A stretch of 64,000 nucleotides of DNA from Prasinococcaceae sp. CCMP 1430. Its lineage: Eukaryota; Plantae; Prasinodermophyta. Where the stretch lies: contig RQSC01000018.1 of the NCBI GenBank assembly GCA_013416795.1, positions 21,002-85,001 on the forward strand, given 5' to 3'. The notes beneath the pieces were generated by a model. That model was not told where the DNA came from, did not search any database, and worked only from the letters and a program-made list of their open reading frames with translations. Below, one piece after another: positions 9,327 through 61,409 of this stretch (the stretch's first letter is position 1; each line of letters starts with the position of its first letter). Made by a program: the position numbers and the translations under genes.

Positions 9327-9381
<55 letters not shown>

Positions 9382-28014: not shown

Positions 28015-30624
28015 ATGGCGCGCCGGCGCGTGCGCCTGTCGGCGTGTGCGCTACTCGCCGCCTGTACAGCCGTGGCCGCGGACGCCCGAGCGCGGGCGAG
28101 CGCCGGTGGCGACGCGCGCCGCACGCACAAGGAAACCTACGTCCTGAATGACAACGTGCCCGCTGGCGGCAATGTGCGCGCCAGCGGCGGCGCGGTCGAC
28201 ACAGACTCCGCCGCTCTACGGTCAGCCACGCTGGCAGCCAACGGCCTCAGCGAGGTCTCGGTGCGCGACGCCCGCCGACGGCTGCGGGAGGCCGACGATG
28301 AAGCCGCGCGCGCTCCCGCCCCGATACGCATGCAGCCCATCTTCCAACTTGAGGACGACGACGGCGCGAGCGTGCTCTCCGCCGGGGCAGAGAACTGGCT
28401 GAAAAACAACGTGCTCCCCGCGGCATTTGCGACGATACAGCGCATGGCTGACATGCGCGCCCCGACCCCTGAGGGTGCGCAGCGCGCGCGCCTGCGCTTG
28501 CGTCTCGCGCGCGCTGTCGCCCGCGACGCTGACACTCGTGCACTCGCGTGCTCGCTCGCAGGGACCAACCTCACGCTCCCCGTGGAATGCGATCTGCCGT
28601 GGAACTTTCCTTCCGATGAAACTCTGGGCGCGGAAGAAGAGCCGCCCGCGATGTGCGCGACCGTGCGCGACATCAACGCCGCGCCGTACAACACGTGCGG
28701 ACCGGCGACGGTGCCGCCGCACATGTTTGGCCCGGCGACGACGTGCGACTGCTCCACCGCGCTCACGCGCGAGGAGTGCGCGTGTACGACCGCCGACGGC
28801 GGGCCTGGTGTGGGGGGCGCGGATACGTTGATTTTTGTGACTGTTGGCGAAAGCTGCGCCGAGGACACCCTGGCGGTGGCAGGGCACTGCTTTCTTGACC
28901 CTGCAACCCACAGGCCACTCGCGGGGTACATGACGCTGTGCAAGTCGACTCTCGAGGCCCACGTGGCTGAAAATGGCGGCATGGCCGCCGCCAACATGGG
29001 CGCCGCCGCCTGGGGCACGTGGCTGGACACGATCGTGCACGAAGTGCTGCATGTGCTCGTGTACTCAGGCCCGCTTTTCAACGAGTGGCAAGATCTTGCG
29101 ACGGGTGAGCCCTACGGTAGCGCCGCAACCGTGAGCATGCGCTATGACAGCGGCTGGCTCTCGGACGGCGTGGCGCTCGCCACGCCTGCCGTGCGCCGCG
29201 AGGCCGCTGCAATTCTGGGATGTGCAGAAGGCGTGGTGGGCGTGCCGCTTGAGAACCAGGGCGCAAAGGGGACCGCCGAATCGCACTGGGAGATGCGCGC
29301 AGTGGGGCCAGACGAGCTGATGGCGGGCTTCACGCTGCCAACCCGCCAGACGCTCTCGAGGCTCACGCTGGCGACTTTCGAAGACTCAGGGTGGTACATT
29401 CCCCGCTACGAGGCCGCGATGCCGATGGCCGACGAGTGGGGCGCAGGAGAGGGCTGCGGCTTTTTCTGGAGCGACTGCAGAGTGAGCGGCGATGGGACAC
29501 CCTGGCGAGACTACAGCGGCTCCCACTTCTGTGACCCTGAGGCGGCAGACATGCACGCCTGCACCACGGGCTCGACAGCAATCGGCGCCTGCACCGCAAC
29601 GCCGCTGATGGACGGCTGCGCGGTGCGCATGGCATATTCAAACGGGCCCTGTACCGACACCAGCAGTGCTTGGCCGACTGGCGCCTTCTGGGGGCAGATG
29701 TACGGCGATGGCGCCGCGTGTATGGCTGTGGACAAGAGCGAGCAGTGGAAGCGCGTGGGCGGTCCTGTCGGGGACTCGGGCGTGCCAGCCGAAGACGCAA
29801 ACGGTGCCTTCCTATACACGCGCGACCTCGTCGTGGGTGCGGGCTGCTTCGAGGTGCGCTGCTCGGAGGACATGAACTCGGTGAATGTCGTGGTAGGCGG
29901 GCTGTCGCAGGCGTGTCCGGAGGGGCAATACGTGAATCTCACCGATTTGGGTGGGGCCTGGCGCGGCGGGCGCATTGGGCCGTGCCCTCCGCCGAACGCT
30001 ATCTGCGAGCGCATGGCTTGCGGCGGCGGCGAGGGCGACAATGCATGCGGCGCCGCCTCCAACGCCGGCCATTGCGGCCATGAGGGAAAGTGCGCATGCT
30101 TCCTTGGGCACGCTGGCGACACATGTGCGCGCGCGGTATGCCTCCGCACGCCCTACGACGGTGCGCCTGACGGGTTTGGCAACGGCGGCTGTGGGACGGC
30201 ATCGGACGTGTGTTCGCCCCTGAGCGGGGAGTGCATGTCTGCCGCCGAATTTGCCGCGGAGCAGGCCACGCGGGCGGAAGGCGGTGACGTCTCCGACGGC
30301 TTGTCACCTGGCGCGAGCGGGGCCAACGTCGATGTCGACCTTGGACCAGCGACGGACGCGGACGTACCAGCCAGTGATGACGGCGCCAACGCTGGCGACG
30401 GGGGGGATTCCGATGTGCAGGACCCTGTGTACATCGACGATGGGGCAGCTGCCACAGACGGCGACGGAGGTGTCATTGGACAGCTGGGCCTGTTTGGACT
30501 GCCACCATTGGCGATTTTGGCCGCGATTCTGGCCATCGCCATCAGGAGCGAGCACGCTCCCTGGAGCAAACACGCTTCCACACCGCGGAGGGGCTCCGCG
30601 GTGGCGGTGGCGAGCGCCGTCTGA
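28015..30624 (+). CDS. Peptidase M8 (leishmanolysin/invadolysin-like) metalloprotease with EGF-like Cys domain and C-terminal TM helix
   Basis: Signal peptide MARRRVRLSACALLAACTAVAA; zinc motif HEVLH; ESHWE; Met-turn ELMAG; LSRLTLATFEDSGWY; WGAGEGC; EGF-like GKCACFLGHAGDTC; TM LPPLAILAAILAIAI. Probable in-frame intron 28475-28561. Confidence 0.9.
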   Translation: MARRRVRLSACALLAACTAVAADARARASAGGDARRTHKETYVLNDNVPAGGNVRASGGAVDTDSAALRSATLAANGLSEVSVRDARRRLREADDEAARAPAPIRMQPIFQLEDDDGASVLSAGAENWLKNNVLPAAFATIQRMADMRAPTPEGAQRARLRLRLARAVARDADTRALACSLAGTNLTLPVECDLPWNFPSDETLGAEEEPPAMCATVRDINAAPYNTCGPATVPPHMFGPATTCDCSTALTREECACTTADGGPGVGGADTLIFVTVGESCAEDTLAVAGHCFLDPATHRPLAGYMTLCKSTLEAHVAENGGMAAANMGAAAWGTWLDTIVHEVLHVLVYSGPLFNEWQDLATGEPYGSAATVSMRYDSGWLSDGVALATPAVRREAAAILGCAEGVVGVPLENQGAKGTAESHWEMRAVGPDELMAGFTLPTRQTLSRLTLATFEDSGWYIPRYEAAMPMADEWGAGEGCGFFWSDCRVSGDGTPWRDYSGSHFCDPEAADMHACTTGSTAIGACTATPLMDGCAVRMAYSNGPCTDTSSAWPTGAFWGQMYGDGAACMAVDKSEQWKRVGGPVGDSGVPAEDANGAFLYTRDLVVGAGCFEVRCSEDMNSVNVVVGGLSQACPEGQYVNLTDLGGAWRGGRIGPCPPPNAICERMACGGGEGDNACGAASNAGHCGHEGKCACFLGHAGDTCARAVCLRTPYDGAPDGFGNGGCGTASDVCSPLSGECMSAAEFAAEQATRAEGGDVSDGLSPGASGANVDVDLGPATDADVPASDDGANAGDGGDSDVQDPVYIDDGAAATDGDGGVIGQLGLFGLPPLAILAAILAIAIRSEHAPWSKHASTPRRGSAVAVASAV

Positions 30625-37943: not shown

Positions 37944-39569
37944 ATGTCCAGCGAAGCCGACGTTCGCGCGGGATGCGCCCTCTCGCGTGAGTTGCGGGTG
38001 GTGGTGCGGGTGGACGTGCGTCTGCGCTGGCACGCGCCGAAATGCGGCGGCGCCGAGTCGGCTCTCACGCGGGCGCAGGCGTCCAGGAGGGCTCGCGAGG
38101 CGACGGCAGTCGCGCTGGCGCATCGGAGCCTGCGGTACGTCGACGGCCCGCTCGACACACCCGCGCTCGAAGCCGTGCGTGCGGCAGCTGGCCCTGCGCT
38201 GGGCGGCATGGTGGATGATGTCAGCGTCGTGGACAGTGATGCATCCTCGCCGCACCACGGCAGCGTGCTGCTCTTCTTCCAGCGCACTCTGCGCGTGGCT
38301 GCGTACGCGCCCGTCGATGAAAATGAGCCACTCTTCGCGGCTGAGGGCGGATCCGAGCCAAGCTGCGCCCGTCCTCCTGTAGAGCAGGAGCCTTTCGGAT
38401 CGCTGCTTGGCGGGGTGGGCGCAGACGACAGGGACAGCTTGTCCGCCGAGGACAGCCCAGCGACTGACATCGGAGGCGACGCGCTTCTCAAGGTCCGACC
38501 CCTTCCTAGCACACAATTGTGCGGTCTTTGGGACTCGCTCCACTACTCGGGCGGTCTGAAGCAGCGCCTGCTGAGGTATGCGTCTAGCAGCGCTGAGCTC
38601 GCACGCACGGGTGCGAGCTCTATGCTGGTCAGCCGTTCCGGCCTCATCCTCCTGCACGGTCCGCCGGGGAGTGGCAAGAGCTCGTTGGCGCGTGCTTTGG
38701 CGCAAAAGCTTGCAATCTGGCACGTCGGTGGCAGCCGCCAGGAGGAGCTGAACGACAGTGGGGTTGCCCTCTTTGCTGGCGCTGAGGTGGCTACAGCGAC
38801 GCTCTATGAGATCAATGCTGCGCAGTGCATGAGCAAATTCTTGGGAGAGAGCTCGAAGACACTCCAGCGGGCCTTCGCCCGCGTTCGCGATGACTTGCAC
38901 GTTCGCCCGAACACCCTCGCGGTCGTCCTGGTTGATGAGGCGGACGCGCTTGCCATCTCGCGTGCGCACAGCCTCAGCGCTGCCGATCCAGGCGACGCCG
39001 CGCGCGTCACAGGCACGCTGCTGCGAGAGCTAGACGCGCTGGCTGAGCTTCAAGGCACGCTCGTACTTGCGACGTCAAACTTGGCGAACGATTTAGATGG
39101 CGCCTTTCTTGACAGGGCGGACCTCAGCGAGCGAATTGGCAACCCTGAGCTGCGCGCACGGTATGGTATCCTGCGCTCCGAAGTGGTCGAGCTCACCCGC
39201 GTGGGACTCGTCGGCGCCACGACGGGAAGGCAGCAACTGCTGCCTCTCGTGTGGGGCACATTTCAGGACTCGAGTCCCCAAGAGGTCGAGTGCGGTGGCA
39301 TTGATCAATCACACGACAGGCGGCTGCGAGCAGACGAGCTGAAGGAGCAACGCGACAACTCGGTGGCCTTGCTCGAGGTAGCAACGATCCTCGGGGGGGT
39401 GTCCGGGCGCGCCCTGAGGCGTCTCCCTCTCCTCGCACATGCAGAAACGCGTACGTGCGAGTACATGGGCCGCGGCTGGGTTTCGATGAAGGACCTCATT
39501 GCATCGCTGCACACGGCGGCGGAAATCGCTTCCTCACGCGCTCGATGCAAGCGCGACAACGGGATTTGA
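37944..39569 (+). CDS. PCH2: Pachytene checkpoint 2 / TRIP13 AAA+ ATPase
   Basis: LWDSLHYSGGLKQRLLRYA, Walker A LILLHGPPGSGKSSLARALAQKLAI, EINA..SKFLGESSK, Walker B LVDEAD, AFLDRAD, GVSGRALRRLPLLAHA. Confidence 0.88.
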   Translation: MSSEADVRAGCALSRELRVVVRVDVRLRWHAPKCGGAESALTRAQASRRAREATAVALAHRSLRYVDGPLDTPALEAVRAAAGPALGGMVDDVSVVDSDASSPHHGSVLLFFQRTLRVAAYAPVDENEPLFAAEGGSEPSCARPPVEQEPFGSLLGGVGADDRDSLSAEDSPATDIGGDALLKVRPLPSTQLCGLWDSLHYSGGLKQRLLRYASSSAELARTGASSMLVSRSGLILLHGPPGSGKSSLARALAQKLAIWHVGGSRQEELNDSGVALFAGAEVATATLYEINAAQCMSKFLGESSKTLQRAFARVRDDLHVRPNTLAVVLVDEADALAISRAHSLSAADPGDAARVTGTLLRELDALAELQGTLVLATSNLANDLDGAFLDRADLSERIGNPELRARYGILRSEVVELTRVGLVGATTGRQQLLPLVWGTFQDSSPQEVECGGIDQSHDRRLRADELKEQRDNSVALLEVATILGGVSGRALRRLPLLAHAETRTCEYMGRGWVSMKDLIASLHTAAEIASSRARCKRDNGI

Positions 39570-42015: not shown

Positions 42016-42407
42016 CTGGCGTGCGCGCGCGGCCGCGTGGCGTTGGGGCGCGAGGGTGGGCGCGCGTCAGCCGCGCTCCTGCATGGTGCACGCGCGGGGC
42101 GCGGACGACGTCCAGATCGGACGCAGCGCGGCCGCCCAGCGGTGCGCCAGGCGCAAACGCTGCCCCCCCCCCCAACCGGCGCCGCCGTCGCCGGCTCATG
42201 GTGCTCACTCGGCGGGCGCCCTCGCGTGTGGCGCGTTCGCTGGCAGGGAAGGTGGCCTCGGTGCTTGAGGGCTCCATCGCACGTGCCGAGTGGGTAGGGA
42301 TTCTTGTNCCTAGCGCGCCGGGGGCCCGGCGGCCGCCGATCGGGCTTGCGCGGCACTCGTGTGTGCGTGGCTTGGGGGGGACGTCCGCGCTCCGGGTGGT
42401 CGGCGTG

Positions 42408-45400
42408 ATGTACGCGCCGCAGCCAGGCGGCGACCTCTACAGGCGACGCACGTCGGCGTCGGGACCCGAGAGCGCAGCGGCGACTGGCGCGGCGGGCGTC
42501 GCGGGGGGGGGGACGCGCGGCGGCATCGGCAGCGGCGGCGTGGGGTATGCAGGGGGCGGGGCGGCCGCCGCTTCTCGCGCGCCGGAGCGGCCCGGATCGC
42601 GGGCCAGGAACGCGCCCCTGACCATTGAGGACATCTCCGACATGCTCAAGGCCACCCACCCGCCCGCGAACCCCGCGCATGTGTGCGAAGACATCGAGAG
42701 ATTCCTCGCGAACGCGGCGGACACGTACACCTACGGCGCGTTCTTCGAGCGGTGCTTCCCAGCGCTGCTCACGAGGGTGTACTCGTTCGAGCAGCCCTCC
42801 CGAGGGTGGGTGGCCACCGCGAAGGGGGAGGATGGGAAGGCCGTGGCAAAGCTGCTGCGACCAGACGGCCCGCTGATGCGTGCCGCGCGATTCGTGGACG
42901 CGGACGAGGGGCGCTCGCTCGCCTTTTACTTTCCCACCAACCTGCTGCCAGCGAGCACGCGGGCGGCGCTGCTGTCTGACGCTGCGGCAGACCAGCTGGG
43001 CAGGACGTCGTGGCACCTGTCCGGGCGCCTCGAGCGGCGCGGCCTGAACGACTGGCAGGTGCGCCTGAACACGGTGGACTACTTCCTCTTCTTCACGGCT
43101 TACTACGCCGTGCGCAGCGTGGGGCCGCCCAGCGGCGCGGCCAGAGCAGCGTCGGAGGCGTCTGCCCCCGTGAGGCAGGGGGTCACCACAAAGCAAGCCG
43201 TAGATGGGTTGAAGTCCGCAGCCAAAGCGATGCAGAGGGGGTTCAAGCCTTTGGTCGGAGCAGGCGGAGCCGCCGCGGAGCCGCCGCCAAAGGTCGACAA
43301 CACGGCGACGTACCACCCGTACAAAGCCATCACGCGCGCGCTGATGCAGCACATGATCCCACCTCTGAGGAAGGCGACGATGAGCGGTCCGTCGGACGGC
43401 GCCTCAGGGGGGGCGGGGGCGGTGCCATCGTCGTCTACGCAACCAACAGCGAGCGCGGCAGACACGAGCCTGCTGCTCTCCGTTTTTATGGAATTCTGGC
43501 TCGAGGACCTGGGCGACGCGGAGCGCGTCAAGTACCAGCAGCAGCAGCAGCGGCGGCAGCAGCTGCCCTACCAGCAGCAGCTGCCGTATCAGCAGCAGCT
43601 GCCTTATCAGCAGCCGGCTGGCATGCCCATGAGCCCCTTGCTGTCGGCGGGCTTCATCGGGCGCGATCAGAGTGCGTACCAGACCCTGCCCTCCGTGGCG
43701 TTTCCGTCGGCCGAAGTGATCGATAGCCTCCAGGAGCTCGTCATCCACATGCACTCTGCTGGGCACAGCATGGGTGGCAGCGCGATCGGCGGTGGCGGCG
43801 GCCAGTACAGGCCGCCGACGTCGATGGCGGGCCCAATGGCGGCGGGTGCCCTGCCTGCTGAAGTGCTCTCGCCGCACCTGCAGCAGCTTCAGCGACCTCT
43901 CTACCGTACGCTGCGACACATGTTTCACTCGTGGCACAAGAAGGGCACCAAGGCGGGCGTTTCGAGCTTTACTGTCGTGTTGTGGATGTGGCGCTCGTAC
44001 CTTCAACCGTGGACGTACTACCGCGACCAGCAAGCCTCACATGCCCTCGGCCTTCCGTTTAAGCTGGGGGCCAACTCGGGGCGGTTCAACCCCGCCTGGA
44101 ATCCCTGGTTGCTTGCGAACCTCCCGTTCTATGTGGCGCTCTTGTCGCACATCGTGGTGTGCTGCTCGCACAGAATGGTGAGCGACGATGACACAGAGCG
44201 CGAGAGTGGCATCAACAATTTGGGGCGCGCGCTGCGCGTGTTCAAAGAGGAGCCCAAGATGCTCGAATTCATTGAGCAGGCGTGGAACGCGTACGTTGCG
44301 TACGCGGGTGCGGGCGCGTCGGGTGCGGGCGCGCAGGCTGCCGCCATGCGCGCATCCGGCGCTGGCCAGACTGAAGCAAAGGAGATAGCCGAAGCCATGC
44401 CCCTTGTGCACTCTCAAATGCTCGACTGGGACCCCGAGATGCTTCGAGAGGCGCTCGGTGAGGGCGCAGTGCCACTCCCGCCGGCGGACGCGAAGGCGAG
44501 TGCCTTCTCGCCGGGGCAGGGCACGGCCAGTGGTGGGTTCTCCACCCCCGTGCAGCCGTCGAGGGAGCGCGTCGAGCCAAAGCTGGCCCGCCTGGATGTT
44601 TTCGGAAAGCAAGGCTTGAGGCACGTGCTCCATCTGCTCGCTGGCCGGCTCAAGGACGACACTCGCCGGGGGCGCGTGCCCAAGAGCGAGGGGCTCAAAC
44701 AGCTGGCGGCGGCTGCGGCGGTCGTGTGCCACGACGAGTCGCTGAAGGCACTGCTCGAGTCATCGGGTTCGCGCGATATTAAGGGGAAGGCCGATGGCAA
44801 GGCCACCAAGACCACGCGAGAGACTCCGTCGCCGACTGGCCCCGACTACTCGCGCGTGCCTGGCGCGCTGCCGATGACGTGGAGCGTCGGCACTCCCAAG
44901 GAGGACGACGGCCACCCCGTGCGCGTGTTCGGCGCGACACTATTCACTTGGCACAACCCCTTCACGATCAACGAACTCACGCACGAGGCGCCTCCAGGCT
45001 ACAAGGGCGACTGGATGCGTCGCCCCATCGCGGCGAATGAGCTCGCGCCGGTGAGTGCGCGCGGCCTGATGCGCGCTTAGCTTATTGGCGCTCCCATGCC
45101 ACACGCACTGCTTGCTGACGCCGCCCCACCCCGGCTCCATTCTCTCCCTTCTCTCGTTCTGGTTCGGGCCCGCATGCGTTCCCGTGTCCAGGCGGTGCGG
45201 CTCTTGGTGGCTCTCTCAGACCGCGCCAACGCATCGGGCATGCTCCCCGCGGGATACTGCGCTGATCTGCGGTTCCTCGCGGAGCACAACAGCCTCGCGG
45301 CGCTGGCACTCTTGCTGCTGCTCTCCTCGCTCTTCCCACTGCTTTGGTCGCTCGTCGCGAGGCTTCTGCTCGTGGCTGCGATCGCATGCGTGGCTGTGAC

Positions 45401-45808: not shown

Positions 45809-47298
45809 TCACTGCGCCGGCACTAGGCCGGCGGCGATCATCGCGGCAAGAGCCTCTCGCTTGACGAAGCGGCCTGGGCAGTCGGGCGCGGGCGCGGGAG
45901 TGCGTTGGGCCGGCGAGCGTCAGCGCCAGGTGTCTGGCAACAGCGGCGCCGCAGCCCCATTCCACGCGCGCGCGCGCAAGCAGCAGGGCGCGCTCTCCGC
46001 GGCGCGCCGACGCTCACCCTTGATACGAGGCCTCCTCTCGGCGTTGACCTTGCGGATCTCGTAGCGGATTTTGGTGTTGAAGGTGCGCGTCTTCTTCTTC
46101 TGCAGGTACCGCATGACTCTCTCTGCGCGTGTCATCTTGTCATCGTCGTCACTCCCAGACGAGGAGCCGCTGACCTTGCCTGAGCCCAGCGCGAACTTGT
46201 TTGTGGCCGCCGCCGCAGCAGCAGCGGCGCTCGCCGCCGCCGCCGCCGCCGCCGCCGCTGCCTGCACGGCGGTCGAGTTGTGCGGGAAGCCATTCATGAG
46301 CCCCGCCCGTGGCACTTTGCCCCTCGGGTTCGAGCCGTTCTTGGCGGCCGCCGGGGACGTGGCGGCGAGCTGCGCTCCGGCCCCCTTGCCGTTGGCGGCC
46401 AATCTGGCAGCGGGCCGGGCGGCGGGCTTCGCCACGCCACCGGACCTCGATGCGGCCTTCGCGGCGGGCTTCGCGGCGGGCTTCGCGGCGGGCCTGAGCG
46501 CCGCGGGCGTGCGCGAGCCACTGGACGTCCTCTTGCCGCCCTTGCTGCCGCTCCTCGAGCCGCTCTTGGCGCCCGTGGCGGCCGGCGCCGCCGCTGCGCG
46601 CGAGGCAGCGGCGCGCGACTGTTTCTTCGACGGCGCGCGCGACCGCCCGCCCCTGGCCTTGGGCGGCAGGCCAGCCTTTCCTCGCTCCTGCGCCTGCCCC
46701 CCCTGCTTCTGCGCCTGCCGCTGCGCCTGCCCGGTGAGCTGTTGCTGGTGGAGGTGCTGCTGCTGGTGCGAGAAGAAGTCCGGCACGACGCCGTCGCCCC
46801 CCCCGAGAATCTGCGCCTGCGAGGCGGGCGGCTGCGCGTACCCGCCGTCGAGGCACCCGCCGACGAACCGGCCGTTCGGCTGGCCCATGCCCACGCTCGC
46901 GGCCGGCGCGCCAAGGACGGCCGGCGCGCCCATCGGCCCGGACATGGCGCCCTGCATGGTCGCGAGTATGTCCGCCTCGTGGTCGCCGCCGTGGCCGCCC
47001 CACGACTTCATCACGTCCTGCGCGCCAAGGGAGGGAGCGACATTGAGGGGAAGGGTGCGTGTGTGTGTGTGTGTGCGTGTTGGGGGGTTGGAAGAGATGT
47101 CGCGCGCGGGCAGCGCGGGGACGAGCGCGCCTCGGCGTCAGCCCGCCGCCTCTGCCTCTCCTCTCCGTCTCTACGTCTCTCCCCCCCCTCGCGCGCCCCT
47201 TCGCCGCCGGCGCGGACTCCGTCCGAAACTCCGCCGAATCCATACGGAATCCGATGGAATCCACGCCCGCCCGTCGATGCGTTCCGACTGCGCGCGGG

Positions 47299-48877: not shown

Positions 48878-51221
48878 CGCGCGGGCGCGGGTGCGTTCGA
48901 GTGCGGAACGCGCGCGGAATTCGCGGGGGAGCGCGCGCGAAAAGGCGCGCGCGGCGGCGCGCGCGCGACGGGGAGGTGGGGGGAACACGGGCGCGCGGGC
49001 CCACGTGGCACGGAAACCACGGAGGGGCGCGCGCGCGATCGCCGCGGTTCGCCTCAGCACCAACGCCGCCCGAGCGGCTTTCGCCCGCCGGAAAGCTCGG
49101 CCGGACGCGGCCCGCGCAACGTCGGTCCGCGTGGCGCACCGGTGGCGCGCCGCACCCGCCGGCCGGCCTCGCCGTGCCGCCAGGCGGGGGCCGGCCCTTC
49201 CAAGCGAGCTAGCCAGAAGAGACAGAGCTTGCGCGCACACGCGCGCCTCGATGCATCAACACGTCGCAGACTCCACGCGAGTGCCAGACCAGCCAGCCAG
49301 AGCTGTGCACTCGACGGAAGGAAGGAGGACGAGGCGCACTGCTGCCTGAGGCGCCGGGTCGATGGTCCACCTACGCGACTTGGGTCGGTCGGTCGGTCAG
49401 TCAGTCAAGGGCCTGCCTGCCGGTAGCTGCGGGTCCGTCGCGTGCGTCGCGTGGCGCAAAACAACGGACGACGACGAGAGAGGACTGCGTTCGGAGACGG
49501 GCGAGCAGCCTGGCCGGGGGCTGACTCAGTCAGGTGCGCGCGTCGCCCTCCCAGCCAGACAGAGGGGGCTGTCGCCCGCCGCTGGCCGTGGGAGCGTGTG
49601 CCGCGACCGACTGACTGAGCGTGCACACTGCACACACACCGCGTTTTTGTTGGAATTGATTTTGATTTTGATTTCATTTTCTGAAAGAACAAAGGTTGGC
49701 CCGGATTTGATCCGGCTTTGCGCGCGCCCCGGCGGCAGACGGGGGGCGGAGCGCCCGCATTCGCGTGGCGGAGCATCCGCGTTCGCGATGGCGCCGGGCC
49801 GCGCGCGCGCGCGTTCGCACCCTGCGGCCGATCGCGCGGTCCGACGGGGCCCATTTGATCGAATGCGCTGCAGATTGCGCGGCCGACATTGCTCGCGCGC
49901 AATCTCCGACGTGGACACTGACAGCCAGAGAGAGAGAGAGAGAGAGAGAGAGCAGCGCGCCCACGAGCCGACGCCGACGCGTCCGCGCCTCCTCGTGGCT
50001 CGCGCCGACGCGCCGACCTTCGGGGGCGACGGGTGGACCTCGAACGGAGACCCCGCCGCCGGAGCGAGCGACGTGCACGACCGGAGCAGCCGTCCTGTCG
50101 GCGGACGTGTCGAGGACCGCAGGTAGCAGCCTAGAGTAGGCACGGTTCACACTGATGAGCAGCCCTCAATGCCGGTACGTGGTACCGGTGCGCGCCTCGC
50201 GCACGACGTACGAACAGTGCCTGCCAGCGGTACGTGTAGCGCATCGCGCGCGCAGCAGATGCGTGGTTGCTGACCGAGACCGACTGGCGGTTAGAAAGAG
50301 TCTTCGAGCAACTTCGAGGACGGCCGACGCCGGCATGGAGGGATTCGCACGACGTGATGTGACCGCGCGTGCCTTCCGTGTGCCATATGGCCCGTCCCCG
50401 TCCGCTTCGAACACAACGCCCACAGCGTGCAGATCTCTCGCGCGACGTGGCGGTGCCGATGCGTCTCGCGGTCAATTCGATGTTACGGTGCAGCGCTCCG
50501 AGGCGCTGCGTGCTGACGCGTCCAACGTTTTGGCCCCTCCCACGTGGATATAGCCGTCGGCGGCGGGCGGGCTCGCAGCGGCAGGTGCGATTTGACGGTC
50601 GTTAGTAACCTGATGGCAGGGAAAAAAAAATGGCGCCACAGCGCGCGCGCGCTGCGCGGGCGGGCCGGGCCGGGCGGCGGGCGAGTGCGTGCGTGTGTGT
50701 GTGTGTGTGTGTGCGCGCGTGGGTGTGTGTGCGCGTGTGTTTGGGGGGCGGGGACGAGCGGGCACGAGGACGCGCGGGCGGCGCGGGCGGCGAAGCGGTG
50801 CGCCATGCCCGGGCCGGCGCGTTTTCCGGTTCGCCGCTGGGGCGGGTATCGCGGCGCGCCTTTTTTTGTGCGCGGTGGCGCGCCCGTGCGGTGTAGCGCG
50901 GGCGGCACTGCAGCCCCTCACAGTGTGTTCGCAGCGTAACGACTGCGCGGTGTGCCAAGTATGGGGGAAGCTGAGGGCGAGCGGGCGCGAGTGTGTGTGT
51001 GTGTGTCACCGACGCAAATTTGCTTGTGCGTGTACTTTTGCGGCAGCTAGAGCGATGGCTGATACCACTGCCCTCCCCCCATCCCCCCCTGTCTGCGCTC
51101 CCTGCAAACGCGCACCCACGACGCACTGGCGTGTTCTACCCGACAGTCCAGGCCCCGAATCACCTGAGTCCTGACGTTGGCGCGTCAACCACTCAACCTG
51201 GAGCGGCCGCACGGGCTGGTC

Positions 51222-53293
51222 ATGAGCACCGCGGAGTCGGCGGTCGAAAGTATATGGCTCGAACAAGAAGCTGCCACGTGCGCCGTGTCTGCGCATGACA
51301 TGCGGCAGGAAGTGCTACACAGTATGCAGAAGCAACATCGGCAGCACCCAAGCGTCCTGCGACTACCGCAGCAGCAGCACCACCACCAGCAGCGGCAGCA
51401 GGAGCGGCAGCAGCAGCGGCAGCGATCGCCAGAGCAGCACCATCTCGCGCAAACACCGTCTCAGGAGCCGTCGCGATCACCTCCGCGCCCGCCACTTCCT
51501 CCGCCACAGCCGCAAACGCAGCCGCCGCCGCAGCCTGCGCCGGTATCGCAGGAGCGGATGCGGCAGGCGCGGATGCGGACCCCACACCCGCAACAACACG
51601 GCAGCGACCAGCAGCAGCGGCAGCACCAGCAGCAGCAGCCATCGATCATGAAACGTGCTCGTCCGGCGACGTGCATGTATTGCCACTCGCAAGCAGCGGT
51701 GCTTTTCTGCTGCAGCGATGAAGCAGCACTGTGCCGGCTGTGCGATGGTATCGTCCACAGCGCCAACGACATCGTCGCCCGCCATGCGAGATGGCCTCTA
51801 TGCGACAAGTGCGGCGCCAAGCCTGCAACGATGTGCGTCGCGAGCGAGTGAGCGCCGGCGCATCCTGCGAATGACCAGCGCATGTGGCGACGCACGTTTG
51901 TTGCGCCGCGGTGACCGGGCCGCCCGGTGACCCGTGCTCGCCGTGGGCGCAGGAGCGCGCGGCGGGATTCCGCAACACAGCAACGTCCGCGCACCGCTAG
52001 TAGCACGCTCCGTTTCCATGCACGCGCACTCGCAGTGCGGCACCTCGCGCTGACGGCCATCGCCGGCGATGGATTGCGCGCTGCGAATCGCGCACGATCA
52101 CGCAGGTACTGCGAAGGCGAGAGGGCAGCGCTGTGCAAGCAATGCGACCAAGAGTACCACAAGAGCAATCCGACGCTGGCAAGCCACGCGAGGCTCCCCA
52201 TCGATCCTATCACTGGCGGTGACTCCTCCGGTGGTGGGCGCGATTCGCCACTATTCGCTGGCGATGCATACTACGCGGCGGTGCCGCCCCCTTCCTTGCC
52301 ACAGGGGCATGGGCGCAGCGAGCATATGCAGCTGGCGCGGCAGGCATCTCTAACCGGCCTGGATGGTCTTTATCAGGTAGCAGCTCAGCCAGACGCAGTG
52401 ACAGGGGACACAACACTCGATACGGCCTTTGACTACGCAGCCAACGCTGACATTGACATCCTCGGTGCCTCTGGCACGCTCGATGACGCCCTCCTTCTCT
52501 TTGGCGAGGCGCCACTTGTCGACCAAAGCAAGCGCCAAGCCAGCGAGTTCCACGACTGGCTCGAAGCTCTGATCGAGGAGGTGCGAATCCCTAAGATGCG
52601 CCACACTCGTTCATTTTGGCCGCGCCTCATCGACAATCACACGCCTGCGATAGTCAACAGCTTTGCACCGTCATCACATCGCTACGTAGCTACGACAATG
52701 ACGTTTCTCGTCTGACTGACTGAATACTTGGTACACGCTCGCCCTCTCGACGCTCGCTTCGACGACGGTGCCACTGCCGCCTTCAACAGAGCCAAGCTCC
52801 AGCGGGTCAGTTCTCGCAAAGCGCACACATTGCAGGGCTCGCGGGTTCAATGTCAGGGAACTTCGACTATGCCTCGCAGAGGACCAAGTGGGCAGCCGGT
52901 TCCGCCGGGAGTGGTGGCCATCTCGCAGGCGATGATGCTTCAAGGATGTGGCACCTGGCGCGCAGCGGGCAAACCGTAGGTGGCAATGCACAGATCACCG
53001 AGCCCAGCACCGGCGGAGCCGCGCGCCAATCGACCACCACACGTGGCGCAGGCGCGCCGTACGGGACCGCAAAAGAGGCCCACGACCCAGGTTCTCAGCT
53101 GCCATCCCTTCATGCCACGCAGCAGTTCGACGCGTATAGGCGCCCCCGGGCCGAGAGCGTGGCACGCTTCAGAGAGAAGCGTCGACAGCAGCAGAGCTAC
53201 GGCACAACCATTCGCTATGCGAGCAGAAAGGTGTATGCTGACTCGAGGCCGAGGGGGAGGGGCAAGCTCGCAAAGACCGAAGAAAACGCGTAA
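51222..53293 (+). CDS. CONSTANS-like protein: Gln-rich N-terminus, two B-boxes, divergent CCT domain
   Basis: B-box1 CMYC..AAVLFCCSDEAALCRLCDGIVHSANDIVARHAR. B-box2 CDKCGAKPATM|YCEGERAALCKQCDQEYH (intron 51833-52105). Probable intron 52581-52789. CCT RAESVARFREKR...IRYASRKVYADSRPR. Confidence 0.9.
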
Positions 53294-53602: not shown

Positions 53603-56600
53603 TCATTGCTCGCACACGGGCGCCGCGGACATTGCCGCCCAAGCTCCCCCACCATCCTCACCCGACCGAGCAAATTCGCACATGCTGTATACCATCGCCT
53701 TGATTTGTTGCGCGCTCGCATCTGTGGCTGCCCGGCTGGCTGCAACTTGTCCCTCGAGCTGATTGACAGCCGACTCGAGCGTGCGCCTCGCTGTGACTTC
53801 CTCGCGTAGCGCCTCCAGAAGGATCGCCACAAATCTGTCGTAAGCCACCGCCTTGTAGCCGTTAGCCTCACGCACAAGATTCGGAAACTCAACCTCGACC
53901 TCCTGAGCCAGCAGACCAATTTGCTTGCCGTGCGTGTTCTCTTGTGAAAATTGCGCTGAATGGCGAACGGCCTCATCGGACCACTCGAACTCAATGCCTT
54001 GAAGACGCAGGACGCGCTCCAGCACGGAATCTTCGGCACGCAAATGCTGCTCAGCACTCCCAATGCCGGCCATGGGTAAGACGTGGGCGGCTGCGCCACT
54101 CTCCCCGGACATGTCATCCGCACCATAGCTCCCATCGACGTCACGGGCCCCACCAATTTGGGTGATAATCGTCTTGAGGCGCTGGTCCGAAGAAGCCCAG
54201 CTGCTGGTGGTGTACGCGCTACCATCAACGTAAAGCGTGTGATCGCCAGCGCTCTGAGTCGCGGACGATGAAAGCACAAGCGCACCAGCACTATCCAATC
54301 GAGCACGCAGCGATGTACCCGAATTCCCTTGCTGTAAGGTATAAAATCGAAGCTCACCTGGAACTGACGAAGTCGTTGAGGCACCGCTCGGTACGCGGGC
54401 TTCAATCTTCGCCCCTACTTGGTATTGATTAGAAGCACAGTTACCATAACAGCCCTGGAATTGGATGACACCTAATCTGTCGCCAGCTTCCACCTTTTGC
54501 TTGGTGCCTGAACTTGAACCTCGCGTCTTTATCAACCGCAACGCAGACGAATACATATTACTCTGATGCGAAGATAAATAAATACGTGCATCATTAGAAT
54601 CCCCCAGAAGAGATATCCCACCGCCAGCACTGTAGCTCACGGGATCATTCGATGAAATAGAAATTCCACCGGCACTCGTAGAGAGCTTGATGGCGTCGGC
54701 GCCCGTGCCGCTCGACGACATATCCAAGGACGTCGACGCAGCCACCGACACGCCGCCGCTCGAAGAGGACACACTCAAAAGCCCATTGGAGCCAACATCC
54801 ATGCCGCCGGAAGAATACATATATACGCCGCCGGAAGAGGACACGCTAAAAAGCCCAGAGGAGTCGACATCCACGCCGCCGGCGCTCGCACTCAGCTTGA
54901 TGGCGTCGGCGCCCGTGCCGCAGCTGCTGTGGTCGTGCGGTCTCAGCCAGCGCGGCGAGTGTCTGTCCTGGTCCAGGAGCGGGTCTTGGTCGCTCGCAAC
55001 CTCAAAAGCGCTCGCGCCCGACGCCGACAGCGAAACGCCCGCGCCAGAGTTCACGTCAACCAAACCGCTGGTCGTGCCCATCACCAAAGACGTCGACGCA
55101 GCCACCGACACGCCGCCGCTCGAAGAGGACACGCTCAAAAGCCCAGAGGAGCCGACATCCACGCCGCCGGCGTGGGCACGCAGCTTGATGGCGTCATCGC
55201 CCGTGCCGGTGCTGCTGTGGTCGTGCGGTCTCAGCCAGCGCGGCGAGTGTCTGTCCTGGTCCAGGAGCGGCGCTTGGTCGCTCGCCACCACGAAAGCGCT
55301 CGCGCCCACCGAAGACAGCGAAACGCCGGCGCCCGCAGAGCTCACCGACACACCGCCGGAGGACGCCGCCACGCCCACGCCAGCGCCCGCGGCCACGTCC
55401 ACGTCAGACGAAGCCGAAACGCTCACCGCGCCGCTCGACGAAGACACGTCCACCGCGCCGTCGGAGTCAACCACCACGCCGCCGGCGCTCGCGTGCAGCT
55501 TGATGGCGTCGGCGCCCGTCCCGCTCGATGTCAGATCCAAGAAGGTGGACGCAGCCACCGACACGCCGCCGCTCGAAGAGGACACGCTCAAAAGCCCAGA
55601 GGAGCCGACATCCACGCCGCCGGCGCTCGCACTCAGCTTGATGGCGTCGGCGCCGGTGCCCTGCTTGTTCCGAAGAGTGATCGTCTCGGATATGCCGCCG
55701 TCACTTTCTACTAATATTGCACCCGCCGCTCCTGACGTGCTCGCAATCGTCACAGGCGCACCGCTGGCGCCGCCGACAGCTTTCGCCGAGGCAGAGCTGG
55801 TACCTACACTGATGGACCCGCCGGTCCCCGAGGTGCTCGCGCCAGCGTCGAGGACCAGACCTCCACCCGCTCCCGAAGACGAAGCACCGCCCGCCACGCT
55901 CACGGCGCCGCCGCCGACTGCGCCGCTGCCCGCGCCACCGCTGATGTGCACGGTGCCGCTCGACGCGGCCGCGCCCGCCCCGCCCGAGATCGTCACATCC
56001 TGCCCCGCTGACGACGACGTTGCGCCCGCGACCACCGAGACAGCGGCATTGCCCGAGCTGCCGCCGATCTGAACGCTCTCCGCAACCGACGCGCCAATGG
56101 TCACTTTGGGGGTGGAGCCGCCCGAGCCCGCGTCAATTGCCAGGTCAACGTTCGATGTCTCCGAGTCGGCCTCGGCAATATCAAGCCCAGTCACGCTCTC
56201 CGCCCGCAGCTCGTTCTGCACGATCACATCCTGATTGGTCGTCACGTGGACGAACGTGCTGTACGTTTCGCTGTACGTCATCTCGTCGGTGACGTACAAG
56301 TTGCCATGCACGGTAGTGTCACCATACATGTCCAAATTGGTGTTGCCTCGCAGGCTCAAACCACCAGTGCTCGCCTCAAGCGACACAGCGCCGGAACCAC
56401 TCCCAGCACCGACGATCGAGACGCTGCTTCCGGCGGATACAGCAACTGAGGTTGACGCATCCATCGTCACCCCACCGCTCACCGCCACGAGATCAAGCGC
56501 TGCAGTGCCGGTGCCTTGAGCATTCCTCAAAGTGATTTGCTCAGACGCTCCTCCATTAGTCACGAGCGAAACAGCCCCAGCGGAACCTGACCTGCTTTCA

Positions 56601-58080
56601 ACGGCCACGGTAGCTCCGCTCGTGCCGCCAAGACGAATGTCCGATGCGACATCGTGGCCAATAGATATAGACCCGCTCGTCGCAGCGCTGCTATCACCTG
56701 CATTGATCACAACCGAACCTCCGATCGCGTCAGCCGCATCCCCAGCAGACACGACAACGGATCCACCAGCGCCGCTGTCGCCAGCGCCCACCGTCAGCGA
56801 GATCGAGCCGCCGGCGCCCTCGGTGCCCGCGCCGGACGCCAGCGAGATGTCGCCCGAAGCGCCCTCAGACGAGTCGCCCGTCGTCACGGCCACGGAGCCC
56901 GAGGCGCCCACGGTGGCGGAGCCACTGCGCACGGTGATCGCGCCGCTCACGCCGGCGGTGCCCGCGTCGGCCGTGGCCAAAGAGGCCGCGCCGCTCGAGG
57001 TGGACGTGCCCACGCCGCTCAACAGCACCAGCGAGCCGCCAGTGGACGTCGCGCCGGTGCCGCCCAACACGGACACCGCGCCGCCGCCGCTGCCGCTGCT
57101 GCCGCTGCCCGCGCCCGCGGACACCACCACGGACCCGCCGGACTCGCCGACGGAGCTGCTCTCGCCGGCGGTCACCAGCACGCCGCCGCCAGCGCCGCTG
57201 TCGCCAGCGCCCACCGTCAGCGAGATCGAGCCGCCGGCGCCCTCGTATGACCGTCCTGTTGTCATGAAGATGTGACCTGAGGGTCCCGAATCTGCATTGC
57301 CAGTGTCGAGGAGTATACGCCCTGTTGATCCATTCTGTGAGGAATCCGTTGCGACCGCGACATCACCACTTGAATTTTCATGACCTTGACCGCTTAGGAT
57401 GCTCACTGTGCCGCCACTGCCACTCTCGCTGGAACCTGCCTGGAGATGCAACGAACCACCGACAGCTGATGACTGTGAGTTCGCAGCTCTCAAACGGACA
57501 TCACCTCCTGCCGACAAGGTCGTGTCTTCACGATTTATTAAGAATTCGTTGGCATCGACAGTGCCCAGACGCACTTGCCCGCGCATAAAAACGTAGTCGC
57601 TCATTGTGTTGCCCAGGGTCGCGTCGCCTTCAACTGCGATGTTTGACTGGAGCTCAGTGTTTCCTGTCACGGTCATGGCGTTCTCGAGGAGGAAGGCACC
57701 GTCCTCGTTGATTGATTCAATGGTGTCGTCGATAAGCCGAAAGCCCTGGCACATGTGCTTCCCCGTGTACATCTTCATGAGTGCCTGCAGCTTGAAGGAC
57801 GCAGATGTCGCACCGTGCACACCTATGTAGTACACGCCAGCAGTCGGGCTCAAGATGTCAAGCTGGTCGTTGCCGTCCATTTCAGCCTTGTATTGATACT
57901 GAGCATCTGTGGGCTGCTGGAGGGTCGTGCTGACGTAGATATTCGCATCTCCGTTGGTGGACGTGAGCCTGAGTATAAGCGTTTGCGCGGCCTCAACGCA
58001 CGCCACGGAGAGCTTGTAGTACTTGTATTCGTCCTCGGAGACGAGGCCAGAGCGCGACACGCCTTTCTCCATAAGAGAGC
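53603..58080 (-). CDS. Phage tail-fibre-like Gly/Ser/Ala repeat protein (at least 1489 aa) with N-terminal PPC-like domain and C-terminal peptidase S74 intramolecular chaperone domain
   Basis: PPC-like YKYYKLSV..LTSTNGDANIYVS..PT..Y..GVYYIGVHG. GxGGxVxLxAG repeats. S74 SSDQRLK, LQGIEFEW, IGLLAQEVEVEFPNLV, AVAYDRFVAILLEALRE plus coiled coil. Acceptor TTCCGCAG at 58081 implies further 5' exons. Confidence 0.85.
54680..55665 (-). repeat. Intragenic tandem repeats GTGADAIKLxAxAGG(VDVGSSGLLSVSSSSGGVSVAAST), five copies of the core
   Basis: Near-identical DNA copies ending at about 55660, 55525, 55210, 54920 and 54715. Confidence 0.9.
56766..57245 (-). repeat. About 57-bp direct repeats (56766-56822 and 57189-57245; EGAGGSISLTVGAGDSGAGG) bracketing a very high-GC block
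   Basis: Identical CCAGCGCCGCTGTCGCCAGCGCCCACCGTCAGCGAGATCGAGCCGCCGGCGCCCTCG at both sites. Confidence 0.9.
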
Positions 58081-58919
58081 CTGCGGAAGCAAGCGCAGCG
58101 CAATGGCACCGTGTGCAGTCGCCACGCGAACGAATTGGGTCAGAGACGAAGCCGCAATACGAGCGTCACCTTGTGGCGCGTGGCGACGGCGCAGCGCCTT
58201 TGCCGGTGTCCGAGCGCATGCGCTGCTCCACAGAGGGGACACGCCGTCTCGACGCCGGCAGCTGCGGCGCATGCACGTCGCCTGCCGCGACGGCGCAAAC
58301 AGCGACGCTTGAAGGCTGCGGAGCAGTGCAGCGGCGCGCGAGCAACGCAGCGCAGTGCTGGAGAGGCGGTGCGGCGATGTGCGGCGACGCGCGTCCTGGC
58401 GAAGCGCAACGGCGTGCCGGTAGCGCTGCGCGGCGAGGGGCAACGTAAACTGCTGGCCACAACGCAACGGCGATGCGGCAGCGTTGGGCGGCAGCGCAGC
58501 AGCGCAGCAGAACTGCAGCAGCGCCAATCGGGCAGCATCTATGATGTCGTAGGCGGGCAGCACTGCGGAGGCGCGGCGTCGCATTACGCACCTGCGCTTG
58601 CCCCGCTGACGAGGGCAAGTAGCGCCACGCCCGCGGCCACGGCCACGGCGCGCGCGGACGCTCGCCGTGTCCTCCCTCGGCATCGAGCGCATGCGGGAGC
58701 TGCTCGGCTCATTGTGCGCCGTGCGCCTCCAGCGCTCTTCTCTGCTCGGGCGGTATCGGTTGGCGTCACCACGCGCATATCTCGTGCGCTGTGCAGCCCC
58801 GGCAGTCCCGTCGCTGCAGCAGCTCCCCGCGGCGGCCCGCCGCGCACCACGCGCCGCGCTCGGGCGGTGGGCGGGACGGGCGAGGCCCCGCTGGCGCAGG
58901 GCAGCCCTGACGTCGGCCC

Positions 58920-59560: not shown

Positions 59561-59960
59561 CCCGCGCCACGGGGGGACGCGACCCCGCCGCGCGCGCGCG
59601 CGCGCGCGCGCGCGAAACGCCGGTCGGACGCGCCACATTGGGTTCAATATCAGGGTCTGTATAATCGCGCACGTTCAGTCCTTTCTGATGTATCTTTTCG
59701 AGTTTGAAAGGTTTGGGTTTTTGCGCGCGTTCCCCCGCGGCGAAAAAAAAAGGGCGGGAAACTCTCTCTCGCGCGCGCTCGCGTTCACATTCGGTTGGCG
59801 GCGCGGTGTGTGGGTGTGGGCAGTGGGGGGGGGGAGGCGCGCGAGGACCAGCAGGGTGCGNAAGCATCTGTCCCCCTCGCCCTCATCGCATCCGCCCTCC
59901 TCGCAGACCACGCAGACTCCGACGCTAGCATCACACGGGACACCCACACACGTATTCTCA

Positions 59961-61409
59961 ATGCACTCTGAGGCCGTCGGCGAGGCCGTCGGTGACGACG
60001 TTGGGGGTGGAGTAGGTGCGCTCGTGGGTGTGGTGGTGGGCGCGGCGGTAGGAAGATCGGAAGGCCGGGCGCGGCGCGACCTGCTGCTCGTGGCGTTCTG
60101 CTTCGTCGACGTGTTCGCCGCGGGGCTCGCCATCGGCGCGATCGGGCCGCAGATGAAGGAGATGGGGCTCGGCCCGGCGACGGCCGGCGCGGTCGGGTCG
60201 GTGTACGGCACGCTGCAGCTCGCGTCCGGCCCGCTGGCGGGGTGGGCGTCGGACGTCTTCGGGCGGCGGGCGGTGCTGTGCGGCTCGTGCGCCGGGATCT
60301 CGCTGGGGTACGCGCTCATGTCCGTCGCGGCGGTCGTGGCGCAAGGGACCGCCGGAGGCGGCACCTCCGCCGATGCCGGCGCTGCGGGAGGGCGCACCGC
60401 GAGCACGCTCGCGGTGGGGCTGCTCATAGCGGCGCGGGTGGTCACGGGCACGAGCAAGCACACGGCGGCCACCACCAAGGCACTCGCCGCCGATGCCACC
60501 CGCGGCGCGACCGGCGGGGCGCGCGCCGCGCTGCTGGGACGGATGAACATGGGGGCGTCGCTCGGCTACATGGTGTCGCCGCTCCTCGGAGCGCACATGC
60601 ACAGCGCGACAGGCACGTACGCGACGGCGGCGGCTGCCGCGGCGTTGTGCTTCGCGGCGCTCGTGCCCTTGGCGATCGCCCTCACCCGACCCGCGCCGCG
60701 CGCTGCCAGGAGTGGCCCCGTCGCGGAGGTGAGCGAGGCGGCGGATCGCTCGCTCGTGGGGCCCCTGCGCGGCATTGCGCGGCTGCTGAAGCAGCCACGC
60801 GTGCGCACCCTGTTCGCCGTGCGACTCCTACTGGGCGTAGGCGTGGCGGCGTTCCGCCAGGTGATGGGGCTGCTCTTCACGTATCACTTCGACCTCAACG
60901 CCACACAGCAAGGGTACGTCATCGCGGCTTTCTCGCTCTTCGGGGCGCTCGCCCAGGGCATCGGTGTGGGGCCCGTCCAGCGCGCGCTGGGCACGGAGCG
61001 CGCGTATGCCGCGGGCCTCGCGCTGCTCGCAGGCTGCTACGGCGCCATCGCGACGGTGCCCAGCCTGGTGACGTTCGTCGCAGTCGTCCCTGCCTCGGCG
61101 ATGGCAGCAGGCCTCGCGCGGCCGCTCGGTTCGGCGCTCCTCACGTCGGCCGCGCCGGGCACAGCGACCGGCCAGGCGCTGAGCGCAGCGGACGTCATAA
61201 TGAGCGCGGCCAGGGCTGTTGCGCCCGCCGCAGCGGGGCTCGCAGTCGCTGCGGCCCCCGAGGCGGCCGCGAGGGGCGTGCCTGCGCTCGCGGCCGTGTC
61301 AGTCGGAGCCGCTGCAGCCGTTGCGTATGTCGCGTTCGGCAACGGCGCCACCCGGGACGGCGACGGCAGCAAGCAGCGAGATGGAACCGACGCGAAGAAG
61401 ACTCGTTGA
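59961..61409 (+). CDS. MFS transporter (TetA/DHA1/MFSD9-like); true start uncertain
   Basis: GSVYGTLQL, motif A GWASDVFGRRAVL, ARVVTG.SKHT, LGYMVSPLLG, ARAVAPAAAG; about 12 hydrophobic segments. Confidence 0.85.
   Translation: MHSEAVGEAVGDDVGGGVGALVGVVVGAAVGRSEGRARRDLLLVAFCFVDVFAAGLAIGAIGPQMKEMGLGPATAGAVGSVYGTLQLASGPLAGWASDVFGRRAVLCGSCAGISLGYALMSVAAVVAQGTAGGGTSADAGAAGGRTASTLAVGLLIAARVVTGTSKHTAATTKALAADATRGATGGARAALLGRMNMGASLGYMVSPLLGAHMHSATGTYATAAAAAALCFAALVPLAIALTRPAPRAARSGPVAEVSEAADRSLVGPLRGIARLLKQPRVRTLFAVRLLLGVGVAAFRQVMGLLFTYHFDLNATQQGYVIAAFSLFGALAQGIGVGPVQRALGTERAYAAGLALLAGCYGAIATVPSLVTFVAVVPASAMAAGLARPLGSALLTSAAPGTATGQALSAADVIMSAARAVAPAAAGLAVAAAPEAAARGVPALAAVSVGAAAAVAYVAFGNGATRDGDGSKQRDGTDAKKTR

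What the first reader, a model, noticed from the sequence alone, without database searches (positions are those of the whole stretch)
53603..58080. Algal nuclear gene encoding a phage-tail-fibre-like protein with an intact self-cleaving S74 chaperone
Seen: at least 1489 aa, comprising a PPC-like beta-sandwich, about 1000 aa of Gly/Ser/Ala/Val beta-strand repeats, fibre-like motifs (GDATLGNTMSDYV, GNLYVT), and a C-terminal domain. That domain starts SSDQRLK (Ser at 54188-54190) and continues LQGIEFEW, IGLLAQEV..FPNLV, AVAYDRF and a coiled coil. Established: peptidase S74/ICA domains of phage endosialidases, tail fibres and metazoan MYRF drive trimer folding and cleave themselves off using a Ser-Lys dyad in the S-D-x-R-x-K motif, which is intact here. 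Inference: a trimeric, autoprocessed fibre of phage or giant-virus origin, embedded among ordinary host genes with no neighbouring viral genes. It could be a domesticated surface or wall fibre, an adhesin, or a virus decoy.
Basis: partly seen in the sequence, partly recalled or inferred. Interest (0 to 1): 0.88.

Follow-up and report, generated by a model that had tools for sequence, protein, structure and literature searches.

The report
Algal self-cutting fibre with variable end
A marine green alga has turned phage tail-fibre parts into an ordinary, intron-containing gene for a secreted fibre that is predicted to trim off its own folding helper, and the fibre's far end varies strongly between wild strains, as if it were tracking a microbial partner or enemy.

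Summary
Real. The 1,489-codon frame (53603-58072, minus) is exon 2 of a Prasinoderma coloniale nuclear gene. A signal-peptide exon (58592-58712) joins it through a phase-1 intron, whose acceptor sits at the same place in 11 loci of distant marine picoeukaryotes. PPC and S74 pass their Pfam cut-offs; Ser1295, Asp1296, Lys1300 and Gly1386 are intact. The module before S74 folds (pLDDT 89) like the triple beta-helix of Bdellovibrio MAT fibres and T5 pb1. The gene sits beside the same CONSTANS-like gene in many independent ocean contigs, so it is not a contaminant. New here: (1) the last module is hypervariable among wild alleles (51 of 144 residues, piN/piS 1.2-1.35 against 0.14-0.51 in controls, mosaic, core residues kept); (2) relatives share the N-terminus and shaft but end in other, non-S74 tips, as in the Bdellovibrio MAT family. 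Corrections: two 60-61 nt tracts are complemented-in-place assembly artefacts, and a 423-nt unit is probably a collapsed tandem array. Trimerisation, cleavage, splicing and ligand are inferred, not shown; the donor is unresolved. The scan noted the same artefact and other fibres elsewhere in this genome.

The parts
58592..58712 (-). Exon 1: predicted signal peptide (basic n-region, hydrophobic core, A-S-A|G type cleavage site); 40 codons plus 1 nt
   Evidence: In-frame join; hydropathy 2.5 over 15 aa; an equivalent exon found in 10 of 11 related loci. Splicing not seen in RNA.
58081..58591 (-). Phase-1 GT-AG spliceosomal intron
   Evidence: Donor and acceptor kept in wild allele L009; acceptor 8 nt before the (L/M)EKGV codon in all 11 related loci
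53603..58080 (-). Exon 2, the whole fibre coding region (residue numbers count from Met 58072)
   Evidence: 97% identical wild protein P0001
57773..58072 (-). PPC-like beta-sandwich (aa 1-100)
   Evidence: PF04151 above cut-off
57503..57772 (-). Family-specific linker (aa ~100-190), found only in eukaryotic metagenome contigs
   Evidence: no hit in IMG/VR or GTDB
56823..57245 (-). 423-nt (141-aa) Gly/Ser-rich unit, GC3 0.96-0.98, probably a collapsed tandem array
   Evidence: 5-6x contig depth in runs X1 and X11; two tandem copies in L028; similar repeats in an oomycete protein P0002
56033..56350 (-). Non-repetitive mid-shaft module (aa 575-680), shared with family members that have other tips
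   Evidence: 38-42% identity to P0258 and L040, E ~1e-20
54653..55705 (-). Second repeat region (GTGADAIKL / GEDL-type repeats); copy number varies among alleles
   Evidence: related repeats in P0187, L002 and P0003-P0007
55211..55270 (-). Assembly artefact 1: bases complemented in place; the peptide encoded here is false
54922..54982 (-). Assembly artefact 2: bases complemented in place
54233..54658 (-). Hypervariable distal module (aa 1139-1280): MAT/T5-pb1-type triple beta-helix segment, GC3 0.42; the predicted end of the mature fibre
   Evidence: PDB profile hits 8OML 1e-18, 8OL4, 8ON4, 4UW7; AF2 pLDDT 89 and Foldseek TM 0.64-0.76; PHROG tail-fibre families; allele analysis
53738..54190 (-). 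Peptidase S74 / intramolecular chaperone: Ser1295 (54190-54188), Asp1296, Lys1300 (54175-54173), Gly1386 (53917-53915), ~45-aa insert, then a coiled coil
   Evidence: PF13884 above cut-off; motif invariant in all alleles and in the divergent homologue L002
51177..53293 (+). Neighbour: CONSTANS-like B-box/CCT gene (convergent), used for host identity and as control
   Evidence: 90% cluster with a Prasinoderma coloniale UniRef entry
59688..61409 (+). Neighbour: MFS transporter (divergent)
   Evidence: same linkage in wild contig L028

Best explanation
A domesticated host gene for a secreted homotrimeric adhesive fibre. Steps: (1) the spliced mRNA gives a signal-peptide precursor that enters the ER (inferred from gene structure conserved across species). 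(2) The C-terminal S74 domain and coiled coil bring three chains into register and start folding of the triple beta-helix (inferred from family knowledge plus the fold match). (3) Once folded, Ser1295/Lys1300 cut the bond before Ser1295 and release a ~195-aa chaperone (inferred; dyad intact and conserved). (4) The mature fibre has no membrane anchor and is probably held in the thick wall or mucilage through its N-terminal PPC sandwich (weak inference), exposing the MAT/pb1-type module at its far end. (5) That end contacts a variable biological partner and is kept diverse by frequency-dependent selection with recombination among alleles (the diversity is shown, the cause inferred). The most likely ligand is a bacterial surface glycan, since the nearest structural relatives are phage and Bdellovibrio fibres and this alga needs external thiamine (about 40%); a virus is next (about 30%).
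For: Signal exon and intron position conserved. S74 motif equals the SDxxxK consensus of PMC10769870 and the S578/D579/K583/G626 set of PMC3742443. Distal module matches Bd1334, Bd2439, Bd3182 and T5 pb1 by profile and by fold, and phage fibres in BFVD and the Atlas. 57 of 122 proteins carrying the module also carry S74. The tip is the highest divergence peak in 10 kb, above non-coding DNA; N:S 73:18 against 41:36 in controls, p=2.5e-4; at least 7 recombination events; 21 of 23 family-conserved residues monomorphic, p=0.006. Relatives swap tips on a shared N-terminus and shaft. Thiamine auxotrophy and thick wall: PMC7455551.
Against: No cleavage, trimer, secretion, spliced read or ligand was observed. 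piN/piS in the tip is not significantly above 1 (p=0.14). The Atlas labels this fold a 'phage tail like trimerisation region' (PF26696), and in Bd1334 and Bd2439 it is a shaft segment below the binding tip. The S74 has an unusual ~45-aa insert, and the monomer model of the C-terminal 365 aa was unusable (pLDDT 40). No culture-transcriptome member appears in the fibre clusters although the COL neighbour has one. RNA evidence is only patchy metatranscriptome contigs.
Confidence: 0.62

Rival explanations
1. A structural wall or mucilage fibre whose exposed end is used as a receptor by an algal virus, or acts as a shed decoy; the tip varies to escape or to trap the virus rather than to bind bacteria.
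For: The same selection signature fits. Prasinoviruses and PLVs carry hypervariable S74 fibres for host attachment (PMC12906663, PMC12220804), so virus-host arms races act at algal surfaces.
Against: No Prasinoderma virus data. Tip relatives are bacteria-binding fibres, not host receptors. Escape alone does not explain whole-tip swapping in the family.
Confidence: 0.2
2. A self/non-self recognition fibre for colony formation or mating: tips bind like or unlike algal cells, and the polymorphism is an allorecognition code.
For: Deep, balanced, mosaic alleles at a single-copy surface locus are typical of recognition loci (general knowledge).
Against: No data on algal ligands. The tip fold is known from microbe-binding fibres. 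Family members occur in other picoeukaryotes not known here to be colonial.
Confidence: 0.09
3. A secreted fibre whose phage-derived end is a recent, loosely constrained passenger: the tip drifts, and S74 may help folding but no longer cleaves.
For: piN/piS is near 1 in the tip and 0.79 in the S74 region, on few changes; low GC3; insert in S74.
Against: Synonymous diversity is also 4-5 times higher in the tip, core residues are spared (p=0.006), no allele has a stop or frameshift in the last 365 codons, and module plus dyad are kept in L002 at 42% and 56% identity.
Confidence: 0.06
4. A relic or contaminant of an endogenous virus (PLV or giant virus) fibre gene.
For: S74-terminal fibres are widespread in PLVs integrated in protist genomes (PMC12220804); an earlier scan note reports a virus-type fibre elsewhere in this genome.
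Against: No viral genes nearby; signal exon and intron conserved across species; N-terminus absent from IMG/VR and GTDB; shaft under purifying selection, piN/piS 0.14; single-copy depth and the same synteny in many ocean contigs.
Confidence: 0.03

Closest known systems
Bdellovibrio bacteriovorus MAT (mosaic adhesive trimer) fibres: Bd3182 (S74), Bd1334, Bd2439, Bd2133 (PMC10769870)
   Same: Cellular host gene; signal peptide followed by a conserved beta-rich N-terminal domain, a long mosaic shaft, a homologous triple beta-helix module, S74 and non-S74 members, exchanged C-termini.
   Different: Eukaryotic, intron-containing, would fold in the ER lumen; the N-terminal domain is PPC-like; shaft repeats gave no hit to MAT structures; single locus with allelic tip variation rather than 21 paralogues; the host is a phototroph.
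Phage tail fibres and spikes with Peptidase S74 (T5 pb1, K1F endosialidase, cyanophage fibres; PHROG 9942, 18345)
   Same: Beta-helix module directly upstream of an S-D-x-R-x-K chaperone; 25% identity over ~280 aa to Synechococcus phage proteins; variable distal end.
   Different: No virion-anchoring N-terminus, no viral context; signal peptide and intron; one copy of the module instead of the usual 2-9; 45-aa insert in S74.
MYRF / MrfA membrane-bound transcription factors (PMC3742443, PMC3828593)
   Same: Eukaryotic use of the S74/ICA dyad for trimer-dependent self-cleavage.
   Different: No Ndt80 DNA-binding domain, no transmembrane helix after the ICA; this protein keeps the fibre context and is predicted to be secreted.
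S74-terminal fibres of polinton-like viruses and prasinoviruses (PMC12220804, PMC12906663)
   Same: Large modular S74 fibres in or around algal genomes; hypervariable.
   Different: Those lie inside viral elements; this one lies between host genes, is spliced, and has an algal N-terminus.

Membership tests
Peptidase S74 / ICA | HMM match above curated cut-off | tested here: met
   PF13884 27.8 bits (34.3 isolated) against 22; homologue L002 40.8 bits
Peptidase S74 / ICA | Ser-Lys dyad five residues apart with Asp/Asn next to Ser | tested here: met
   S1295, D1296, K1300; kept in all alleles and L002
Peptidase S74 / ICA | Conserved Gly (endoNF G956, MYRF G626) and C-terminal coiled coil | tested here: met
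   G1386 in the IGLLAQE motif (equivalence by motif); long C-terminal helix in the model, only at pLDDT 54-65
Peptidase S74 / ICA | Oxyanion-stabilising arginine | tested here: inconclusive
   Its position is not given in the paper read; Ala in V-x-Y is the commonest residue among homologues
Peptidase S74 / ICA | Trimer-dependent self-cleavage | not testable with these tools
   Needs expression and an S1295A control
Bdellovibrio MAT fibres | Signal peptide followed by a conserved beta-rich N-terminal domain | tested here: inconclusive
   Same layout, but the domain is PPC-like and was not compared with the MAT N-domain; no PDB hit for the whole protein
Bdellovibrio MAT fibres | Homologous triple beta-helix module | tested here: met
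Bdellovibrio MAT fibres | Interchangeable S74 and non-S74 C-termini on a shared N-terminus | tested here: met
   Window has S74; L040 and P0258 do not
Bdellovibrio MAT fibres | Encoded by a predatory bacterium and used in prey recognition | tested here: not met
   Host is a green alga; works like a MAT, is not filed as one
MYRF family | Ndt80 DNA-binding domain and a TM helix after the ICA | tested here: not met
   No such Pfam hit; maximum 19-aa hydropathy 1.43
Endogenous virus (PLV/NCLDV) fibre gene | Flanking viral core genes | tested here: not met
   Pfam of 26 other ORFs shows host families or nothing

The most novel reading that the evidence does not exclude
Marine green picoalgae have independently built a MAT-like system: an old family of secreted fibres with a fixed PPC base and swappable phage-type ends. 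The Prasinoderma member would be a case, undescribed in the papers searched, of a host-encoded S74 fibre maturing in the eukaryotic secretory pathway, and uses a recombining, selectively diversified tip to capture specific bacteria (for example vitamin suppliers) or viruses.
Probability: 0.4. Interest if true: 0.88.

Novelty: new variant of a known kind. Interest (0 to 1): 0.72.

Why it matters
Known eukaryotic uses of the S74 chaperone are MYRF-type transcription factors and fibres inside viral elements. A spliced, secreted host fibre that keeps the phage architecture would be a second route of domestication and would parallel Bdellovibrio's adhesins. Surface molecules by which picoalgae recognise bacteria or viruses are almost unknown, and the wall of Prasinoderma has no identified components (PMC7455551). 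This locus gives a single-copy candidate with natural alleles and a small foldable domain, so the question can be tested directly. Practical point: complement-in-place tracts in this assembly are shown to be artefacts.

Tried and rejected
Whole-protein PDB sequence search: nothing. NCBIfam: nothing. Atlas by features: nothing for aa 1-290; unnamed, mostly chlorophyte clusters at 0.92 for aa 440-900, a lead only. AF2 on the last 365 aa with a 12-sequence alignment failed; no multimer tool. Single-sequence scans of viral and metagenome contigs with the C-terminus found nothing; the alignment found only ~30% identical S74 domains. The S74 tree (quick method, 116 columns) joins the window with L002 at 99 but resolves no donor. 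Rejected: contaminant or mis-assembly of the locus; Met 58072 as start; the odd peptide at aa 935-954 and 1031-1051 as real; the S74 insert as an intron (an RNA-library contig reads across most of it, and L002 has a shorter insert at the same place; three in-frame GT-AG pairs exist but none is supported); gene conversion from a close paralogue as the source of tip diversity (single-copy depth at 80% likeness). The hosts of L002, L027, L029-L040 and P0258 could not be named. L040 has two related ~180-nt introns resembling Micromonas clade E2 introners (PMC4540971), but the sequence match could not be verified. The L040 and P0258 tips have no PDB or phage hit.
Full report
Observation. Pfam places a PPC domain at aa 26-87 and Peptidase_S74 at the C-terminus, both above their curated cut-offs. 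Residue numbers below count from Met 58072.

Host and reality of the locus. The convergent neighbour is a CONSTANS-like gene whose wild copy clusters at 90% with a Prasinoderma coloniale UniRef entry. Other genes scanned in the window are ordinary eukaryotic ones or have no Pfam match. The fibre gene lies next to the same CCT gene in over a dozen independent ocean contigs and next to the MFS gene in another. Fourteen DNA data sets hold 93-95% of its words, and two of them cover its unique parts at single-copy depth. The window has N gaps, so it is not the published long-read assembly.

Gene structure. A hydrophobic exon at 58712-58592 joins the frame through a 511-nt phase-1 GT-AG intron and adds 43 residues. 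Homologues of the N-terminal module (38-50% identity) occur in eukaryotic metagenome contigs, mostly head-to-head with the spliceosomal helicase BRR2. All 11 examined have an AG exactly 8 nt before the (L/M)EKGV codon, and 10 have a matching signal-peptide exon. The module was not found in IMG/VR or GTDB. The N-terminal half is therefore an old eukaryotic secreted protein. Splicing itself was not observed: the metatranscriptome contigs cover parts of exon 2, none of the listed pieces lies in the intron, and no splice joint was reported. The spliced model was not used in any database search.

Assembly faults. Two stretches of 60-61 nt encode an out-of-character peptide, while their complement without reversal encodes a normal repeat. 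Independent contigs carry that complemented form at 97-100%, and the contigs of both DNA runs leave the window exactly at those edges. These are artefacts; earlier scan notes list the same fault elsewhere in this genome. The 423-nt unit at 56823-57245 has 5-6 times the local contig depth in both runs (a rough measure), coincides with scaffold gaps, and is doubled in L028. The true protein may be about 2,100-2,200 aa (inference). Repeat number also differs among wild alleles (P0001 is 1,218 aa).

The phage-type end. The module at aa 1156-1290 recurs in 2-9 copies in many metagenomic proteins, about half of them with S74. A 112-sequence profile hits Bdellovibrio MAT fibres (8OML, E 1e-18; 8OL4; 8ON4) and T5 pb1. 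The model (pLDDT 89) matches the same structures (TM 0.64-0.76) and phage fibres. The S74 motif has the Ser, Asp, Lys and Gly shown to be needed in MYRF and endosialidase and is kept in L002, a homologue at 42% (module) and 56% (S74) identity. A tree groups the window with L002 but identifies no donor. PLVs and prasinoviruses also carry S74 fibres and remain possible vectors.

Variation. Nine distinct alleles of the last 365 codons fall into five tip classes, two of them mosaic. In aa 1139-1280, 51 of 144 residues vary; piN is 0.07-0.10 and piS 0.06-0.08, against piN 0.002-0.008 and piS 0.010-0.017 in the shaft and the COL gene. It is the highest peak in 10 kb, above intergenic DNA. The N:S ratio exceeds controls (p=2.5e-4) but not neutrality (p=0.14); the four-gamete test needs at least 7 recombination events over the 365 codons. 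Residues conserved in the wider family are spared (21 of 23, p=0.006). This pattern fits balancing or diversifying selection on a folded, exposed domain better than decay.

Family. P0258 (1,420 aa) and the L040 gene share the PPC-linker, the Gly-rich repeat and the mid-shaft module with this gene but end in unrelated, non-S74 domains. P0187 shares the second repeat type, has a third kind of end, and lies on a contig compositionally like the window. This mirrors the S74 and non-S74 MAT subfamilies.

Mechanism and verdict. Shown: a real, single-copy host gene with intact S74 motif, a trimeric-fibre fold next to it, conserved exon structure and a hypervariable end. Inferred: secretion, trimer assembly, cleavage before Ser1295, wall retention through PPC, and binding of a variable partner, most likely a bacterial surface and next a virus. 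One caution: the Atlas names this fold a trimerisation region, and in two MAT structures it lies below the binding tip; here it is the last module of the mature chain, as in pb1. It works like a MAT or phage fibre, is a member of the S74 family by sequence, and is not a MAT, a MYRF or part of an endogenous virus. No paper describing it was found. New variant of a known kind; interest 0.72.

Noticed in passing
window 55211-55270 and 54922-54982: Complement-without-reversal tracts, shown against independent contigs and two DNA runs to be assembly artefacts; similar tracts noted elsewhere in this genome are probably the same fault.
   Followed up: yes
window 4579-16957 (+): Dynein heavy chain gene in several exons; Prasinoderma is described as non-flagellate. 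A radial spoke protein 3 gene lies on the compositionally similar contig L005.
   Followed up: no
window 45920-47014 (-) and 51177-53293 (+): Two CCT-domain genes within 7 kb of each other.
   Followed up: no
window 27634-30624, 37944-39569, 42021-45080: Leishmanolysin (M8) peptidase, TRIP13/Pch2-like AAA ATPase and a mitochondrial sphingomyelinase-like gene.
   Followed up: no
L040 10383-10562 and ~10776-10956: Two related ~180-nt introns inside the fibre homologue, introner-like, absent from the other loci; the second appears to have a GC donor.
   Followed up: partly
L005 5791-11004 (P0187): 1,737+-aa protein with the same GEDL-type repeats but no S74; possibly the 1,843-residue fibre of note s1-409030 (not verified).
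   Followed up: partly
L027, L029-L040: Fibre homologue head-to-head with BRR2 in at least six picoeukaryote lineages (BRR2 86-88% identical); most contigs break about 1 kb into the gene, which would hide the family from annotations.
   Followed up: partly
P0002 (Lagenidium giganteum): An oomycete protein shares the Gly/Ser repeat type of the 423-nt unit (49% over 90 aa), so this repeat is not limited to green algae.
   Followed up: no
window aa 1465 and 1487: Two cysteines near the C-terminus are kept in the divergent homologue L002; a possible disulphide in the released chaperone, fitting a luminal location.
   Followed up: no
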